Below, one piece after another: positions 11,514 through 36,205 of a DNA stretch of 64,000 nt; positions within the stretch are counted from its first letter, which is position 1; the number at the start of each line of letters is the position of its first letter. The position numbers were made by a program, and so were the translations under genes. Where the stretch lies: positions 62,001-126,000 of IMG/VR virus record IMGVR_UViG_3300042922_001182, one strand, 5' to 3'. Under the pieces are notes generated by a model, which saw only the letters and a list, made by a program, of their open reading frames with translations, made no database searches and had not been told where the DNA came from.

Positions 11514-11542
11514 GTTTGCGCCGGGCCCTTCCGGGGTATGAT
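11514..11542 (+). promoter_or_regulatory. GTTTG-N15-GGGTATGAT element (SigB/SigF-like; overlaps a -10 TATGAT)
   Basis: Same geometry as 21710-21738. Confidence 0.5.
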
Positions 11543-21709: not shown

Positions 21710-21738
21710 GTTTGGGCCCGTTCAACTTCGGGTATAAT
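21710..21738 (+). promoter_or_regulatory. GTTTG-N15-GGGTATAAT element (SigB/SigF-like; overlaps a perfect TATAAT)
   Basis: Same geometry as 11514-11542. Confidence 0.5.
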
Positions 21739-30321: not shown

Positions 30322-30395
30322 GCCTTCGTAGCTCAGCTGGACAGAGCGGGTCCGTCCTAAGGACAAGGTCGGGGGTTCGAATCCCTCCGGGGGCG
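30322..30395 (+). tRNA. tRNA-Arg (anticodon CCT), CCA not encoded
   Basis: Acceptor GCCTTCG/CGGGGGC, D-arm GCTC/GAGC, anticodon loop GT-CCT-AA, T-loop GGTTCGAATCC. Confidence 0.88.
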
Positions 30396-30438
30396 CTCGC
30401 CGAAAGGCGCTAACGGCAAAGAGAAGGAGAGAAGCAAC

Positions 30439-31797: not shown

Positions 31798-31807
31798 CAC
31801 ATATCAT
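31798..31807 (+). promoter_or_regulatory. Early-type motif variant CACATATCAT
   Basis: One mismatch; back-to-back with the late promoter. Confidence 0.45.
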
Positions 31808-31846: not shown

Positions 31847-32410
31847 GTGCATCAACAGATCCATGACATCAGCGGCCTTGAGACCGCCATCAGACTTCAG
31901 CGCGGGACGGAGTACCAACTCGCACCCGGCCAGGAGTTCCAGGGGATGGGCGCAGAGCTCAGGGTCTCCCACATCCCCCTCGGGAGGGCGTGCGGCGCCT
32001 CCTTCGAGGCGACCCCGAGGCAGTTGATCGAGACGAGCTTCCGCTGCCCGGGTTGCGACCCCATGAACGAGGAGTACGGCACCGACATCATCCGTGGGGT
32101 GCTCGACGAGGCGGGGGTGGGTTACACCGAGGGGGCCTTCTTCGAGGGCCTGGTGGGAGAGGACGGGGGAGACCTCGGGTTCGACTTCGAGGTGGAGATC
32201 CCCGGCAGGGAGGACCCCCTCTACATCGCCTTCGCGCCCTCCTACTGCTTCATCAACCACGACCGCATGACCCAGGACTACCAGACACTCAGGGGGTTCG
32301 CCTTCGAGTACGAGATGGACTTCCTGGAGTTCACCTACCAGCAGGAGCCCGCAGGGATCCGCAAGGAGCTCCAGGAGGAGCTAGCCAAGAGATTGACGCC
32401 CGCTCAGTAG
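31847..32410 (+). CDS. Degenerate Vsr/DUF559-like endonuclease-fold protein with Zn motif, acidic
   Basis: H....CG..F...P..L.....CP.C, then I...L...G..Y.....F......L.FDF.V; AAGGAG RBS with GTG start. Confidence 0.5.
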   Translation: MHQQIHDISGLETAIRLQRGTEYQLAPGQEFQGMGAELRVSHIPLGRACGASFEATPRQLIETSFRCPGCDPMNEEYGTDIIRGVLDEAGVGYTEGAFFEGLVGEDGGDLGFDFEVEIPGREDPLYIAFAPSYCFINHDRMTQDYQTLRGFAFEYEMDFLEFTYQQEPAGIRKELQEELAKRLTPAQ

Positions 32411-32416
32411 AGCGAG

Positions 32417-32444
32417 AGGGGGGACGAGTTCCCCCCATTTTTTT
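32417..32444 (+). terminator. Intrinsic terminator
   Basis: GGGGGGA.../TCCCCCC plus T-run. Confidence 0.55.
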
Positions 32445-32454
32445 GGAGGAACCA

Positions 32455-33627
32455 ATGAACGCCAAGGAATCCCCCACCGTCCCCCTGCACCTGGTGCTCG
32501 CCATGGTCGGCGGCAACCACGACGACCGAGCGCGGATCCTCTCCTCGGCCCCTATCTTCCTGGACTACGGCACAGTCTCGGGTCTGGAGGAGCTGGCCAA
32601 GGCCCTCGACTTCATGGGCCAGAAGTCCGACCGCTGGAGGAAGGCCCAGTACTTCGCCAAGATGGAGTTCCTGCGCCTCGGCGGCTGGCGCTTCCTGGAC
32701 CGATACGGCGACCCGTCGTCGTACGGCGCGATGGCAAAGATGGTCTTCCTCGACGACTGCCCTGAGTACGAGCTATTCGAGAAGCTGGTCTCCAACCCCT
32801 ACGCCCCCATGATCTCGGAGCAGGCCTACCGGCAGCTGCTGGAGGAGCTGGACCGGCCCCAGCAGCGGATCGCCTACCCCGAGATCCCCCTCCCCGAGGG
32901 CTACGTCGTCGTCAAGGCCCCCGCCTTCGAGGAGGACCCCCGAGACATGATCAGCCCCGGGGGCTACGAGGAGGCACTGACGAAGGCCGGTATGGAGACG
33001 GTCGTTCTGGAGGAGACCGTGGCCCAGGTGGAGCCCACCCCTCTGGCCGTCGTCTTCCCGCCCAGGAACCCCGAGCTGGACCGGAACCCCCCTCCGTCAC
33101 CCTACCACACGGCGTCCCCGGAGCCCGTCGTCTCCACCGCCACCACCATCTTCCGCTCCAGCCAGAAGATCGTGCTCGACGGCGAGTGGTGGGTGGAGGC
33201 CAACCCCAACATCACCGCAGGCGAGTTCCTCAAGAAGACGCATCCCGATAACACCCGCGTCCTGGTCGAGGTGCTCCGCGACGGAAGCCAGGTCGCCGTC
33301 CACAGGGACGACCGGATCTTCTTCCACAGCAACGTGTTCCGGGTCTTCCGGCTCTACGAGCAGGAGAACGGTGAGCCCAAGAAGATCGCACCCGCCGTGT
33401 TCATGTACGGTCTGGATGGCGAGATGGTCGTTGCCTCAAAGCGGATCATGACTGCCGAAGAGATCCTGAAGGACAACGGCTGGGATCCGGAGCTGTTCTA
33501 CCTCGTCGAGCTACTGGGCAGCAGCCAGCAGGAGAGCTACGAGAACAAGAACGGCACCGAGTTCGACTTCGCCCTGCCGGACCACAGGCGCCTCGTCGCC
33601 GTCTACTGTGGTTCTACCGCCAACTAG
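32455..33627 (+). CDS. Protein with C-terminal tandem multi-ubiquitin-like (beta-grasp) domains
   Basis: Two repeats, IVLDGE...ITAGEFLK...LVEV and YGLDGE...MTAEEILKDNGWDPELFYLVEL.G...ESY...RLVAVYCG; GGAGG RBS. Confidence 0.6.
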   Translation: MNAKESPTVPLHLVLAMVGGNHDDRARILSSAPIFLDYGTVSGLEELAKALDFMGQKSDRWRKAQYFAKMEFLRLGGWRFLDRYGDPSSYGAMAKMVFLDDCPEYELFEKLVSNPYAPMISEQAYRQLLEELDRPQQRIAYPEIPLPEGYVVVKAPAFEEDPRDMISPGGYEEALTKAGMETVVLEETVAQVEPTPLAVVFPPRNPELDRNPPPSPYHTASPEPVVSTATTIFRSSQKIVLDGEWWVEANPNITAGEFLKKTHPDNTRVLVEVLRDGSQVAVHRDDRIFFHSNVFRVFRLYEQENGEPKKIAPAVFMYGLDGEMVVASKRIMTAEEILKDNGWDPELFYLVELLGSSQQESYENKNGTEFDFALPDHRRLVAVYCGSTAN

Positions 33628-33637
33628 GAAGGACACC

Positions 33638-34168
33638 ATGAAAGCTTACGTCACCATAGGTCTCCCCGGATCGGGGAAGACCACGTTCGTCAACGAGTTC
33701 CTGCCCAACGCGGTGAACCTGAACCTGGATGACTACCGGGCGATGGTGGGCACCGGGCCCCACGACATGCAGGCCTCCAGGGAGGCCGCCGCACGGCGGG
33801 ACCTGGACCTCCGGGTCGCCGCCTCGGAGGGCCGGGACGTCGCCATCAGCGACACCAACATGAGCAAGAAGTACAGGCTCCCGCTGATCCACATGCTCCG
33901 GGGTCTGGGCTACGAGGTGATCTTCGTGCTGTTCGACGTCGGGTGCGCAGTCTGCTGCACCCGGCAGTCCGATAGGCCGGTTGAACAGCAAGTGCCGTAC
34001 GAGGCCATCAGGAGCATGGACAAGCGCTTCTTCGAAGACGGCGCTTTCAGCACCGACGAGTACGACCGAATCATCAACATCGTCCCTTCCTACTCAGGGA
34101 GGCTGTTCGACAGCAAGCCTCCTACCATAACGATGAGGAGCGGCGGCTTCCCGTGGTGCGTCACATGA
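33638..34168 (+). CDS. P-loop polynucleotide-kinase-like protein (AAA_33)
   Basis: IGLPGSGKTT, LDDYR, ISDTN, R...R....VP.EAI..M. Confidence 0.8.
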   Translation: MKAYVTIGLPGSGKTTFVNEFLPNAVNLNLDDYRAMVGTGPHDMQASREAAARRDLDLRVAASEGRDVAISDTNMSKKYRLPLIHMLRGLGYEVIFVLFDVGCAVCCTRQSDRPVEQQVPYEAIRSMDKRFFEDGAFSTDEYDRIINIVPSYSGRLFDSKPPTITMRSGGFPWCVT

Positions 34169-34848
34169 CGGACGACAAAGGGCTGGACTTCCAGCAGGCG
34201 CAGAAGCGCCGGGTTGCCGACACGGTGATGAAGGAGCTGGGGCTCAACGCGGAGGACCTCGCCGCCGTGGCCGAGACGGCGCCGAAGGAGATCCGCGACG
34301 CCTTCTACGACTGCCTCCAGCGCAACGCGATGTACAAGAGCATCGGCAGGCAGCGGGCGGCGGAGGAGGAGGCGAGCGGGACCCCTGGCGACAGGTGCTG
34401 CAACGTGGTGTGCCCCAGCTTCAAGCAGAGCGAGTTCGAGGTGGAGACCCCCACCGAGGGCGGCTGCATCCGCATCTCTTGCACCGGGAAGCAGAACTAC
34501 TGCACGGGAGGCGTCGACAGGGCGCAGGGCTGCACCCACAGGATGAAGGAGATGCCCCCGAGCGACCCGTTCCGCTCCGACATCCCCTCCCACCAGGAGG
34601 CGGTCAACATGCTCATGCGGGCGGGTCTCCTGGAGCCGGACGAGTTCGGCCACTTCAACGGCACCGACCTCGCCCACAGGGCGGCGACGCGCTCCCTGTG
34701 GTGGGCCTATGTCGATCTCCTTGCAGAGACGGGTAAGATCCCCATCATCAACTGGACGGATGAAGACGGCGTGCAGCTCCCCGACAGGGGGGCCGTGGCC
34801 CAAGCCGCCAAGCACCACCTTTTCGGGGGCGAGACCCCCGCCAGCTAG
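34165..34848 (+). CDS. Cys-rich hypothetical protein
   Basis: ATGA overlap; cluster of Cys/His. Confidence 0.7.
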   Translation: MTDDKGLDFQQAQKRRVADTVMKELGLNAEDLAAVAETAPKEIRDAFYDCLQRNAMYKSIGRQRAAEEEASGTPGDRCCNVVCPSFKQSEFEVETPTEGGCIRISCTGKQNYCTGGVDRAQGCTHRMKEMPPSDPFRSDIPSHQEAVNMLMRAGLLEPDEFGHFNGTDLAHRAATRSLWWAYVDLLAETGKIPIINWTDEDGVQLPDRGAVAQAAKHHLFGGETPAS

Positions 34849-34852
34849 AAAC

Positions 34853-34885
34853 GCCGGAAACCGTCCCACCCGGACGGTTTCCGGC
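34853..34885. terminator. 14-bp hairpin
   Basis: GCCGGAAACCGTCC/GGACGGTTTCCGGC. Confidence 0.55.
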
Positions 34886-35056
34886 ACAAACCCCCGCTTG
34901 CCCACTTGCGTTTCGCCACGTTCGCGGCCCCAAAACCTCCGTTTCGGCCGGTGCGGGCCCCCTCCGGCCCCGCCATACTTGGGGCCGTGGACCTGAGGAA
35001 ACGCCCCGGCGGGGTCCACCGGGAGAGAGACCGGGGCAGGAGAAAGGAGGCCACGA

Positions 35057-35830
35057 ATGGCCACTCGACGCAAGAGCATGAACACCTGGCAGGGCACCGG
35101 CTGGGAGCAGGAAGCCGGTCAAGACCCGACTCGACGGGGCGCCCCGGCGGCAAGGGCCCGAGGCGGCATGGACGAGTTCCTGTCGCACGAGGCCCCGCAG
35201 GAGGAGCTGGACAAGCTCGCCCAGGCGGGCGTCTCCCGCGAGGACGTGGACAGCCGCGTCTTCGCCCAGGAGCAGGGCGGTGGCGGCGGCGGCGGCTACA
35301 TGGCCGAGGCCGTCCAGACCGGCCCGCGCCCGCTCCCCGGCCGCACCGGCCAGGTCCAGCAGCGGCGCCAGGCCGTCCCCGGCCCCGTGACCTGGGTGCC
35401 CGAGGAGCAGGCGGCTCAGTACGAGGAGGAGTACGAGGAGCAGGAGCGCCCGCGCCTCGCCGGTCGAGTCCGCGCCACCGGCCCGGTGGCGATCGGCCCG
35501 CACGGCGAGGAGGTCCACGTCCCGGTGATGCGCGGCCTGCCCATGCGCACCTACAGCGAGCAGCCCCGAGTGGCCGTCCAGCTGTTCGAGGACGAGGAGC
35601 TCCAGTTCGACTACGAGCACGGCAAGCGCGTCTCGATCCCCATCACCGGCCGGTTCTACAACATGATCGGCAAGATGGGCGGCGAGATCCGCAAGCAGCA
35701 GCTCGGCCCCGAGGGCTACAGCCGCATGGGCAAGATGGGCGGCGACAAGGTGGCCCGGATGTACCGGGCGGCTCAGCAGGCCGAGCGCCAGCGCATCGAG
35801 GCGGCCCGCAGCGGCCGGAGGACGAGGTAG
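35057..35830 (+). CDS. Hydrophilic protein with C-terminal GsiB/Em (LEA_5, KGG-repeat) motif
   Basis: FYNMIGKMGGEIRKQQLGPEGYSRMGKMGG resembles the Em/GsiB 20-mer GGETRKEQLG.EGY.EMGRKGG; AAAGGAGG RBS. Confidence 0.7.
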   Translation: MATRRKSMNTWQGTGWEQEAGQDPTRRGAPAARARGGMDEFLSHEAPQEELDKLAQAGVSREDVDSRVFAQEQGGGGGGGYMAEAVQTGPRPLPGRTGQVQQRRQAVPGPVTWVPEEQAAQYEEEYEEQERPRLAGRVRATGPVAIGPHGEEVHVPVMRGLPMRTYSEQPRVAVQLFEDEELQFDYEHGKRVSIPITGRFYNMIGKMGGEIRKQQLGPEGYSRMGKMGGDKVARMYRAAQQAERQRIEAARSGRRTR

Positions 35831-35869: not shown

Positions 35870-35900
35870 GGGGGGACGGCAGGGATGCCGTCCCCCTTTT
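35870..35900 (+). terminator. Intrinsic terminator
   Basis: GGGGGACGGCA/TGCCGTCCCCC plus TTTT. Confidence 0.7.
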
Positions 35901-35904
35901 CACG

Positions 35905-35914
35905 CACATATTAT
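35905..35914 (+). promoter_or_regulatory. Early-type motif CACATATTAT heading the accessory gene array
   Basis: Exact motif immediately after a terminator. Confidence 0.6.
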
Positions 35915-35959
35915 GCCCTTGACAACGGTTTGCTGACTACGGAAAGAGGTATTTCCAAC

Positions 35960-36205
35960 ATGGTGATCATCAACGGAAACAAGAGCGTCTACGACAAGGA
36001 CGCCCTCCTGGCGCTCTACTTCGCGATCGCCCGTGGCGACTACATCCTCGTGGATACCACCAAGATGCTGTACGCCAACGGCCAAGGGTTCTCCACCGTC
36101 GACGAAGGGGTTTCTACGATCCTGCTCGATGCCAAGGCGACCGCCCGCCGTGTCGCCAACATCGTCGAGGAGCGGGCCAAGGATCTCATCAAGGAGAAGG
36201 ACTAG
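35960..36205 (+). CDS. Hypothetical protein
   Basis: AGAGGT RBS. Confidence 0.7.
   Translation: MVIINGNKSVYDKDALLALYFAIARGDYILVDTTKMLYANGQGFSTVDEGVSTILLDAKATARRVANIVEERAKDLIKEKD

What the first reader, a model, noticed from the sequence alone, without database searches (positions are those of the whole stretch)
35057..35830. GsiB/Em (group-1 LEA) stress motif on a long disordered phage protein
Seen: a G/E/Q/R-rich low-complexity protein ending in FYNMIGKMGG-EIRKQQLGPEGYSRMGKMGG, in its own hairpin-bounded unit with neither phage promoter motif (only CATACT at 34974). Known: GsiB is a SigB-regulon desiccation/stress hydrophilin. Inference: together with the SigB-like elements, this points to a phage adapted to persist in stressed, dormant or sporulating hosts.
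Basis: partly seen in the sequence, partly recalled or inferred. Interest (0 to 1): 0.6.

Follow-up and report, generated by a model that had tools for sequence, protein, structure and literature searches.

The report
Jumbo-phage protein with LEA stress motif
A soil jumbo phage encodes a mostly disordered 257-residue protein whose last 60 residues are a real copy of the "group-1 LEA / YciG-GsiB" motif that bacteria, seeds and brine shrimp use in drought-stress proteins; this is rare in phages and suggests, but does not prove, a phage-made stress protectant.

Summary
Window 35057-35830 (+) is a well-supported coding frame: GC3 is 0.94 and the Shine-Dalgarno AAAGGAGG sits 6 nt before the ATG. 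It encodes a 257-aa, very hydrophilic protein (GRAVY -0.97, Gly 13%), flanked by two strong hairpins.

Residues 196-257 are truly homologous to bacterial LEA_5/KGG "general stress protein YciG" proteins. The best phmmer E-value against 1.84 billion proteins is 1.6e-20. Real scores are 40-46 bits against at most 17 bits for 2,500 shuffles. The Pfam LEA_5 score (26-30 bits) is below the 40-bit cut-off because only one complete 20-mer unit is present. Residues 1-195 have no relative anywhere.

The genome is a 239-kb, 63.5% GC, soil-derived distant relative of Bacillus phages AR9/PBS1. The gene lacks the phage's AR9-type early promoter (CACATATTAT-6N-G). It also lacks the SigB/SigF-like GTTT-N14-15-GGGTAT motif found at six other intergenic sites. 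The regulatory link to SigB is therefore not supported for this gene.

LEA_5/KGG proteins are absent from 50,697 isolated phage genomes. Three short ones occur in IMG/VR contigs.

Most likely function, inferred only: a phage hydrophilin or molecular shield. Host, expression timing and activity remain untested.

The parts
34853..34885 (+). Upstream hairpin: 14-bp perfect stem, 5-nt loop, no U tail. It marks the end of the preceding early-promoter-driven gene block (31990-34848).
   Evidence: -29.3 kcal/mol, z -6.78, 0 of 200 shuffles fold as well. Similar tail-less hairpins sit just before early promoters elsewhere in the genome.
34886..35056 (+). 171-nt leader/promoter region with no recognisable promoter. 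It contains CATACT at 34974-34979 and the Shine-Dalgarno AAAGGAGG at 35043-35050, 6 nt before the ATG.
   Evidence: no early-motif or SigB-like match.: fold z -0.95, not significant.: no Rfam family.: no repeat of this region elsewhere in the genome.
35057..35830 (+). CDS of 257 aa (28.6 kDa, pI 8.9), a hydrophilin-like protein. The public gene call starts at Met38 (220 aa), but the upstream ATG has the much better ribosome-binding site.
   Evidence: (codon-position GC 0.75/0.50/0.94).
35057..35641 (+). Residues 1-195: an orphan region predicted to be disordered, with net charge -8, a Gly7 run, P/Q/R-rich and acidic E/Y blocks, and a short predicted beta-hairpin at residues 171-185.
   Evidence: no hit on this part in 1.84e9 proteins; no Atlas look-alike; no paralogue in the phage; pLDDT mostly <50.
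35642..35827 (+). Residues 196-257: the LEA_5/KGG-type module. It consists of a half unit (FYNMIGKMGG), one complete 20-mer (residues 208-227, nt 35678-35737), then GG-DKVARMY and a basic helical cap. Net charge is +10.
   Evidence: predicted helix 198-252.: highest amphipathic helical moment in the protein (0.6). By eye against the alignment consensus, the 20-mer matches at 15 of 20 positions; against the Artemia/plant motif printed in PMC8946055, at 12 of 20.
35870..35901 (+). Downstream intrinsic-terminator-like hairpin (12-bp G+C-rich stem, 4-nt loop) followed by UUUU.
   Evidence: -31.7 kcal/mol, z -3.8.
35905..35921 (+). Boundary marker, not part of the gene: the phage early-promoter motif CACATATTAT-(6N)-G, which starts the next transcription unit.
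   Evidence: about 25 copies genome-wide, nearly all on the + strand and intergenic. It has the same architecture as the AR9 early promoter ...ATATTAT-(6N)-G+1 (PMC5312081).

Best explanation
Shown: the gene encodes a chimeric protein predicted to be intrinsically disordered. An orphan, mildly acidic 195-residue region is followed by a basic 60-residue module. That module is homologous to the C-terminal end of bacterial group-1 LEA (LEA_5)/KGG 'YciG-GsiB' general-stress proteins: half a repeat, one full 20-mer, and the family-typical helical cap.

Inferred: the phage makes this protein in the infected cell as a hydrophilin, or 'molecular shield'. The LEA module would be disordered when hydrated. 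On water loss, crowding or contact with a client (protein or RNA), it would fold into an amphipathic, positively charged helix. The long acidic disordered arm would keep the complex soluble and spaced. Together this would preserve the phage's replication/expression machinery, or the infected soil bacterium itself, through drying or starvation until the infection can finish.

The opposite charges of the two parts (-8 and +10) also make self-association or RNA-driven condensation plausible. Expression is probably from an unrecognised (late-type) promoter or by read-through. It is not driven by the phage early promoter or by the SigB-like promoter class.
For: Homology of residues 196-257 to bona fide LEA_5/KGG proteins:
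- the top hits score 48-92 bits on LEA_5 and also match KGG.
- alignment and shuffle control.
- sources name the closest hits 'general stress protein YciG'.

Physical properties:
- hydrophilin-type composition.
- predicted disorder plus a C-terminal helix.
- strongest amphipathic moment and charge block in the module.
- coding signature, strong ribosome-binding site and own terminators argue for a real, well-translated gene.

Functional precedents from papers:
- Artemia group-1 LEA AfLEA1 goes from disorder to 85% helix on drying, protects LDH, binds RNA and phase-separates with it (PMC8946055).
- A. baumannii ABUW_2433 is a 411-aa protein with a small KGG domain plus a long disordered region. 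Its loss lowers desiccation survival more than 100-fold (bioRxiv 10.1101/2021.08.11.455981; PMC10732645).

Context:
- the sequence comes from a soil metagenome.
- close bacterial relatives of the module are frequent in Lysobacteraceae and Rhodanobacteraceae, and in groups known from general knowledge to form cysts or spores (Myxococcales, Azotobacter, Methylocystis).
- three other viral contigs carry short LEA_5/KGG proteins inside phage gene modules, so phages retain such genes repeatedly.
Against: - Only one complete 20-mer is present, whereas bacterial and eukaryotic members have 2-8. The Pfam LEA_5 score is below the curated cut-off and KGG does not match. The motif reads K-M-G-G rather than K-G-G.
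- No relative of the whole protein exists, so conservation and purifying selection cannot be assessed.
- There are no expression data and no promoter.
- The host is unknown.
- The molecular function of bacterial LEA_5/KGG proteins is itself poorly defined. Reported phenotypes include biofilm, motility and acid tolerance (PMC9262955, PMC7161692).
- A lytic phage that finishes its cycle quickly may have little need for a desiccation protectant.
Confidence: 0.45

Rival explanations
1. Mimic or adaptor. The captured LEA_5 end-piece is used not to protect but to dock onto whatever the host's own YciG/GsiB-type proteins bind, or onto those proteins themselves. The phage-specific disordered arm would then redirect, sequester or sense the host general stress response.
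For: Only the terminal unit plus cap of the bacterial family is kept, and it is fused to a unique 195-aa region. This is typical of domain capture for targeting. Specific partner binding by this type of protein is reported: a YhjH-YciG interaction in Salmonella (title of bioRxiv 10.64898/2026.06.04.730116, listed, paper not read). Another small bacterial hydrophilin, not of this family, also binds kinases: BatR with SrkA and GlpK (bioRxiv 10.1101/2024.04.17.589660).
Against: No partner is known for the LEA_5 20-mer itself. The host and its LEA_5 complement are unknown. No structural or co-evolution evidence is available. No complex test was run because no candidate partner could be named.
Confidence: 0.2
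2. Nucleic-acid-binding or condensate scaffold for the phage's own processes (replication/transcription factories or RNA handling). In this reading the LEA-like helix is simply a basic RNA/DNA-binding helix.
For: The last 62 residues carry net charge +10 and the rest -8, a block polyampholyte. AfLEA1 phase-separates with RNA (PMC8946055). The gene sits among DNA/RNA-metabolism genes: SbcC-like, polynucleotide-kinase-like, DNA polymerase.
Against: There is no nucleic-acid-binding domain match. Neighbourhood in a jumbo phage is weak evidence. AR9-type phages are described as not forming a nucleus-like compartment (PMC7598289).
Confidence: 0.15
3. Virion-internal or ejected protein. A disordered, charged protein would be packaged with the DNA and would stabilise the particle (for example against drying) or act on entry.
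For: Jumbo phages of this group package many proteins, including the virion RNAP (PMC7598289). High charge and disorder are common among packaged internal proteins (general knowledge). The portal-like and sheath genes lie about 20 kb downstream.
Against: No PHROG or structural-protein match. The gene is not within the structural module. No proteomic data exist.
Confidence: 0.1
4. Evolutionary debris. A fragment of a host stress gene was picked up by illegitimate recombination and is translated as the tail of a fast-evolving ORFan with no selected function.
For: It is a singleton with no relatives. The local G+C (68%) is above the genome mean (63.5%). Only a fragment of the bacterial protein is present.
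Against: The frame is intact with phage-typical codon bias (GC3 0.94). The ribosome-binding site is excellent and the gene has dedicated terminators. The motif's invariant positions are all preserved. Other phages keep LEA_5/KGG genes.
Confidence: 0.1

Closest known systems
Bacterial LEA_5/KGG small hydrophilic proteins, annotated 'general stress protein YciG'; the closest representatives are P0003, P0006 and P0007
   Same: The 20-mer unit GG-x-x-RK-x-QLGPEGY-x-x-x-GK-x has all invariant positions preserved. The preceding 'FY-x-x-IGK-GG' half unit and the terminal 'GG-x-[RK]V-...' helical cap are also present. Identity over the module is 50-67%.
   Different: Bacterial members are 55-200 aa, consist almost wholly of 2-6 repeats, and start with a conserved M-[ST]-V-x-E-A-G motif. 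The phage protein has one full unit at the end of a 195-aa unrelated region, uses K-M-G-G, and is phage-borne.
Plant Em / Artemia AfLEA1 group-1 LEA proteins (Pfam LEA_5, PF00477)
   Same: The same Pfam family is hit. By eye, 12 of 20 positions are identical to the group-1 motif printed in PMC8946055. The protein is hydrophilic, Gly-rich and predicted to be disordered, with helical propensity.
   Different: The score is below the family's gathering cut-off, there is a single unit, and there is a large non-LEA part. Stress induction is unknown.
Acinetobacter baumannii ABUW_2433 (KGG-domain hydrophilin needed for desiccation tolerance; per PMC10732645 the DtpA/DtpB hydrophilin class)
   Same: The architecture is a small KGG/LEA-type module plus a long intrinsically disordered region (bioRxiv 10.1101/2021.08.11.455981).
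   Different: The module is N-terminal there and C-terminal here. The disordered part there has AT-hook motifs, and none were seen here. No sequence comparison was run.
Bacillus subtilis GsiB (SigB-dependent general stress protein)
   Same: It belongs to the same broad repeat family: LEA_5 also matches in the B. subtilis control genome.
   Different: GsiB's defining SigB-dependent promoter has no counterpart upstream of the phage gene. The phage unit is of the 'RK-x-QLGPEGY' type found in Proteobacteria and Myxococcota.
Short LEA_5/KGG proteins on IMG/VR viral contigs (L080 42-335, L081 1644-1865, L082 711-1061)
   Same: They are phage-borne members of the same family, located inside replication or packaging modules.
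   Different: They are 73-116 aa all-repeat proteins of the 'V-K-E-K-Y-G-x-E-F-Y' variant, with no long orphan region. They share only 40-50% identity with the focal module.

Membership tests
Pfam LEA_5 (PF00477, group-1 LEA) | Score at or above the curated gathering cut-off (40 bits) | tested here: not met
   26.2 bits for the whole protein, 28 bits in the genome scan, 30.2 bits for residues 190-257 alone.
Pfam LEA_5 (PF00477, group-1 LEA) | Presence of the conserved hydrophilic 20-mer motif | tested here: met
   One complete unit at residues 208-227. All ten invariant alignment columns are kept. phmmer gives 40-46 bits against bona fide members, versus at most 17.2 bits for shuffles.
Pfam LEA_5 (PF00477, group-1 LEA) | Small protein built mainly of tandem motif repeats (2-8 copies) | tested here: not met
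   One full unit plus two partial ones in the last 62 of 257 residues. The first 195 residues are unrelated.
Hydrophilins (operational class) | Gly above 6% and very high hydrophilicity; predicted disorder | tested here: met
   Gly 13.2%, GRAVY -0.97. AlphaFold2 pLDDT is below 50 for 179 of 257 residues. The hydrophilicity index is borderline against the usual threshold of 1.0.
Pfam KGG (PF10685, YciG-type repeat) | Match to the KGG repeat model | tested here: not met
   No KGG hit even at E<=10, although the closest bacterial relatives do hit KGG. The phage has K-M-G-G.
SigB regulon-type general stress gene (GsiB-like regulation) | SigB-type promoter (GTTT-N12-15-GGGTAT) upstream | tested here: not met
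   No match, even relaxed, in 34849-35056, while six such sites exist elsewhere in the genome.
SigB regulon-type general stress gene (GsiB-like regulation) | Induction by stress or starvation | not testable with these tools
   Only one DNA run (soil metagenome) holds the sequence, and there is no RNA run.
AR9-type early gene | Early promoter ...ATATTAT-(6N)-G upstream | tested here: not met
   The best PWM score upstream is -5.3, against >=16 for the 25 genomic sites.
Desiccation/freezing protectant (LEA function) | Protects enzymes or cells on water loss; disorder-to-helix transition | not testable with these tools
   Only predictions are available: helix 198-252 and amphipathic moment 0.6.

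The most novel reading that the evidence does not exclude
This would be the first recognised virus-encoded LEA-type hydrophilin. It would be a new kind of auxiliary gene by which soil phages make the infected cell, or the virion and its contents, tolerate drying or dormancy. The LEA 20-mer would act as the water-loss-responsive element and a phage-specific disordered arm as the shield or condensate former. Together with the SigB/SigF-like promoters elsewhere in the genome, it would point to a jumbo phage whose programme is wired to the host's stress state.
Probability: 0.25. Interest if true: 0.7.

Novelty: new variant of a known kind. Interest (0 to 1): 0.45.

Why it matters
LEA/hydrophilin proteins are a classic but mechanistically unresolved answer to water loss in seeds, brine shrimp and bacteria. 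A phage-borne version would show that viruses also invest in this chemistry. That bears on how phages and infected cells persist in periodically dry soil.

The minimal module (one 20-mer plus cap) fused to an unrelated disordered arm is also a natural 'dissection' of the family. It could be used to test what a single group-1 LEA unit does. If the protein turns out only to bind a host partner, it would instead be a tool for finding what bacterial YciG/GsiB-type proteins interact with.

Tried and rejected
- Whole-protein relatives. The word search found only the phage's own gene call. IMG/VR found none, and tblastn of 50,697 isolated phage genomes found none. PHROGs and NCBIfam gave no family.
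- N-terminal region. There were no hits in 1.84e9 proteins, no Atlas look-alike and no paralogue in the phage. The single-sequence AlphaFold2 model has low confidence (pLDDT 46.6), so no fold search was run on it.
- Synteny. The upstream neighbour's homologues lie in unrelated phage contexts without any LEA motif. Neighbour and RNAP-beta searches of IMG/VR found no close relative of this phage.
- Donor or host from the module. DNA identity of about 86% over about 80 nt to Myxococcales, Methylocystis and Frateuria alike is not diagnostic. The best protein matches are spread over Lysobacteraceae, Rhodanobacteraceae, Myxococcales, Methylocystis and Azotobacter. The host is left unresolved.
- Promoter of the gene. 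There was no sigma-70-like site, no early motif, no SigB-like motif, no AR9 late AACA-(6N)-TA/G match by eye, no repeated element, no Rfam family and no significant leader structure.
- Phage-encoded sigma or partner-switching proteins. No Sigma70_r2, no RsbW-type kinase and no WhiB were found. The single weak Sigma70_r4 hit is just a helix-turn-helix in a Cys-rich 177-aa ORF.
- Expression. Only one soil DNA run holds the sequence.
- Literature. No paper links LEA/hydrophilins to phage genes.
- No complex prediction was attempted because no partner could be named.

Full report
**1. What is at the coordinates**

Window 35057-35830 (+) is an open frame of 257 codons plus a stop. Its codon-position G+C is 0.75/0.50/0.94, the pattern shared by the other genes of this 63.5% G+C genome. 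AAAGGAGG lies 6 nt before the ATG. The public gene call (P0001, 220 aa) starts at Met38, but the upstream ATG has the better ribosome-binding site.

The protein is 28.6 kDa with pI 8.9, Gly 13.2%, Arg 12.1%, Glu 10.9%, Gln 8.9% and GRAVY -0.97. It is the third most hydrophilic ORF of the phage.

A 14-bp hairpin without a U tail (34853-34885; -29.3 kcal/mol, z -6.8) precedes the gene. A 12-bp hairpin followed by UUUU (35870-35901; z -3.8) comes after it.

**2. The motif is real homology, not composition**

- Pfam LEA_5 matches residues 200-248 at E 1.1e-5 and 26.2 bits. That is below the 40-bit cut-off. The C-terminal piece alone gives 30.2 bits.
- KGG, PHROGs and NCBIfam give nothing.
- An exhaustive phmmer search of 1.84 billion representative proteins returned 85 hits at E<=1e-3. 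Apart from the phage's own public gene call (P0001), all fall on residues ~178-257. The best is 1.6e-20 at 67% identity.
- The top hits are bona fide LEA_5 members (48-92 bits) that also hit KGG. Where a source names them, they are 'general stress protein YciG'.
- Five such proteins score 40-46 bits on the real C-terminus. The best of 2,500 shuffles scores 17.2 bits.
- In the alignment the phage keeps every invariant column.

The module reads as a half unit (FYNMIGKMGG), one full 20-mer (residues 208-227), then GG-DKVARMY and a basic helix. The tail parallels the family's terminal 'GG-Q-R-V-R-E-L-I-E-E-G-K' cap. By eye, the 20-mer matches the alignment consensus at 15 of 20 positions. Against the Artemia/plant group-1 motif printed in PMC8946055 it matches at 12 of 20.

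**3. The rest of the protein is an orphan**

No stretch of residues 1-195 finds anything:
- nothing in the 1.84e9-protein search;
- nothing in the Atlas feature search;
- nothing in the phage itself.

AlphaFold2 without an alignment gives pLDDT 46.6. Only short helices (residues 48-68), a small hairpin (171-185) and a long C-terminal helix (198-252; pLDDT up to 79) are predicted. The N-terminal part has net charge -8 and the last 62 residues +10. The module also holds the highest amphipathic helical moment in the protein.

**4. The genome**

The window lies in a 238,984-bp viral record with terminal repeats (a 127-bp exact repeat). The only run that holds the sequence is a soil metagenome.

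It encodes split multisubunit RNAP beta-like subunits, a tail sheath, a portal-like protein, a UvsX-like recombinase, an NAD-dependent ligase, an SbcC-like protein and a DNA polymerase. Its nearest isolated relatives are the Bacillus phages AR9, PBS1 and Internexus. Tail sheath identity is 44-45% and RNAP beta 42%. Yersinia phiR1-37 and Staphylococcus jumbo phages come next. No close relative exists in IMG/VR.

The host is unresolved:
- there is no WhiB;
- the LEA module's nearest bacterial relatives are spread over Lysobacteraceae, Rhodanobacteraceae, Myxococcales, Methylocystis and Azotobacter;
- DNA-level identity (about 86% over about 80 nt) is equal across these groups.

**5. Regulation**

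A motif CACATATTAT followed by six bases and a G occurs about 25 times, nearly always intergenic and on the + strand. It has the architecture of the AR9 early (virion RNAP) promoter AAATATATATTAT-(6N)-G+1 (PMC5312081). One copy sits at 31798, before the gene block that ends at the upstream hairpin. Another sits at 35905, immediately after the focal gene's terminator.

A second class, GTTT[G/C]-N14-15-GGGTAT[A/G]A, occurs at six intergenic sites. By spacing and sequence it looks like SigB/SigF-type promoters (general knowledge).

Neither class is present upstream of the focal gene. The best early-motif PWM score there is -5.3, against >=16 for true sites, and no relaxed bipartite match was found. 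The following were also checked and not found:
- a sigma-70-like site;
- an Rfam element;
- significant leader folding.

Tail-less hairpins also precede early promoters elsewhere. The upstream hairpin therefore probably ends a unit, but read-through cannot be excluded.

The phage has no detectable sigma factor or RsbW-type kinase. Its relatives transcribe largely without host RNAP (PMC5312081, PMC7598289).

**6. How rare in phages**

- Nothing matches in 50,697 isolated phage genomes, either with the phage protein or with a bona fide bacterial member (only a spurious lysin hit at E 0.7).
- There is no PHROG family.
- A pattern-limited scan of 2.9 million IMG/VR contigs found three short LEA_5/KGG proteins, described below.
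- No paper found links LEA/hydrophilins with phage genes.

The three IMG/VR proteins sit in phage contexts:

| Locus | Length | LEA_5 score | Context |
|---|---|---|---|
| L080 | 97 aa | not scanned | beside a 271-aa protein with a P-loop motif (by eye) and a 937-aa ORF; neither was scanned against families |
| L081 | 73 aa | 36.7 bits | between a helicase and a terminase-like gene |
| L082 | 116 aa | 47.6 bits | upstream of a 131-aa ORF with a sub-threshold VRR-NUC match |

**7. Interpretation**

Shown: a real, probably well-translated phage gene whose product is a predicted-disordered chimera ending in one unit plus the cap of a bacterial group-1 LEA/YciG-type protein.

Inferred: it acts as a hydrophilin. 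Two precedents support this:
- AfLEA1 folds to helix on drying, protects LDH and condenses with RNA (PMC8946055).
- A. baumannii ABUW_2433, a KGG module plus a long disordered region, is needed for desiccation survival (bioRxiv 10.1101/2021.08.11.455981; PMC10732645).

The rivals, none excluded, are a targeting or mimic module, a nucleic-acid or condensate scaffold, a virion-internal protein, and debris.

Strictly by Pfam's threshold and by architecture it is not a LEA_5 family member. It is a divergent, minimal, fused derivative.

**8. Verdict**

- The family assignment is correct at the motif level.
- The regulatory and lifestyle inference is not supported for this gene.
- It is a new variant of a known kind, of moderate interest.

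Noticed in passing
window 11564, 16793, 25900, 31798, 35905 (about 25 copies genome-wide): Conserved intergenic motif CACATATTAT-(6N)-G, almost always on the + strand and often just after a hairpin. It has the same architecture as the AR9 early (virion RNAP) promoter ...ATATTAT-(6N)-G+1 (PMC5312081). A subset also has GAATCTA or GAAACTA about 20-25 nt upstream.
   Followed up: partly
window 11514-11539 and 21710-21735; four more sites outside the window (genome 53276, 156870, 188557 on the minus strand, 210611): Bipartite GTTT[G/C]-N14-15-GGGTAT[A/G]A motif, resembling SigB/SigF-type promoters. All six strict sites are intergenic. Two sit before an RNAP beta-like gene and a polymerase-like gene, and two are in tandem with the early motif. 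No phage sigma factor or RsbW-like protein was found. This raises the question of whether a host stress sigma or a phage factor reads them.
   Followed up: partly
whole record (window = bases 62001-126000 of a 238,984-bp virus record): A 63.5% G+C soil jumbo phage whose closest isolated relatives are the low-G+C Bacillus phages AR9/PBS1 (42-45% aa identity in RNAP beta and tail sheath). Papers describe those relatives as having uracil-containing DNA. It has a 127-bp exact terminal repeat and no close relative in IMG/VR. Whether it has dU-DNA and what its host is were not examined.
   Followed up: partly
window 35885-36205: The mechanical ORF's ATG at 35885 lies inside the terminator hairpin of the focal gene. 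The true start of the next gene is more likely the ATG at 35960 (preceded by GAAAGAGG), downstream of the early promoter at 35905.
   Followed up: no
L080 42-335; L081 1644-1865; L082 711-1061: Three IMG/VR viral contigs encode short (73-116 aa) all-repeat LEA_5/KGG-type proteins within phage replication or packaging modules. Such proteins are therefore a rare but recurrent phage cargo.
   Followed up: partly
window 34153-34848: The upstream neighbour (231 aa, no family) has homologues (42-55% identity) on high-G+C (58-74%) metagenomic phage-like contigs and in Salicola phage SCTP-2 (31.7%), always in different gene contexts.
   Followed up: partly
window 30322-30396: tRNA-Arg(CCT) gene, the only tRNA in the window.
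   Followed up: no
genome 229010-229543 (outside the window; L083 1432-1965): A 177-aa Cys-rich ORF with a weak sigma-70 region-4-like helix-turn-helix (19.4 bits). It is not a sigma factor by region 2 and may be a small DNA-binding regulator.
   Followed up: partly
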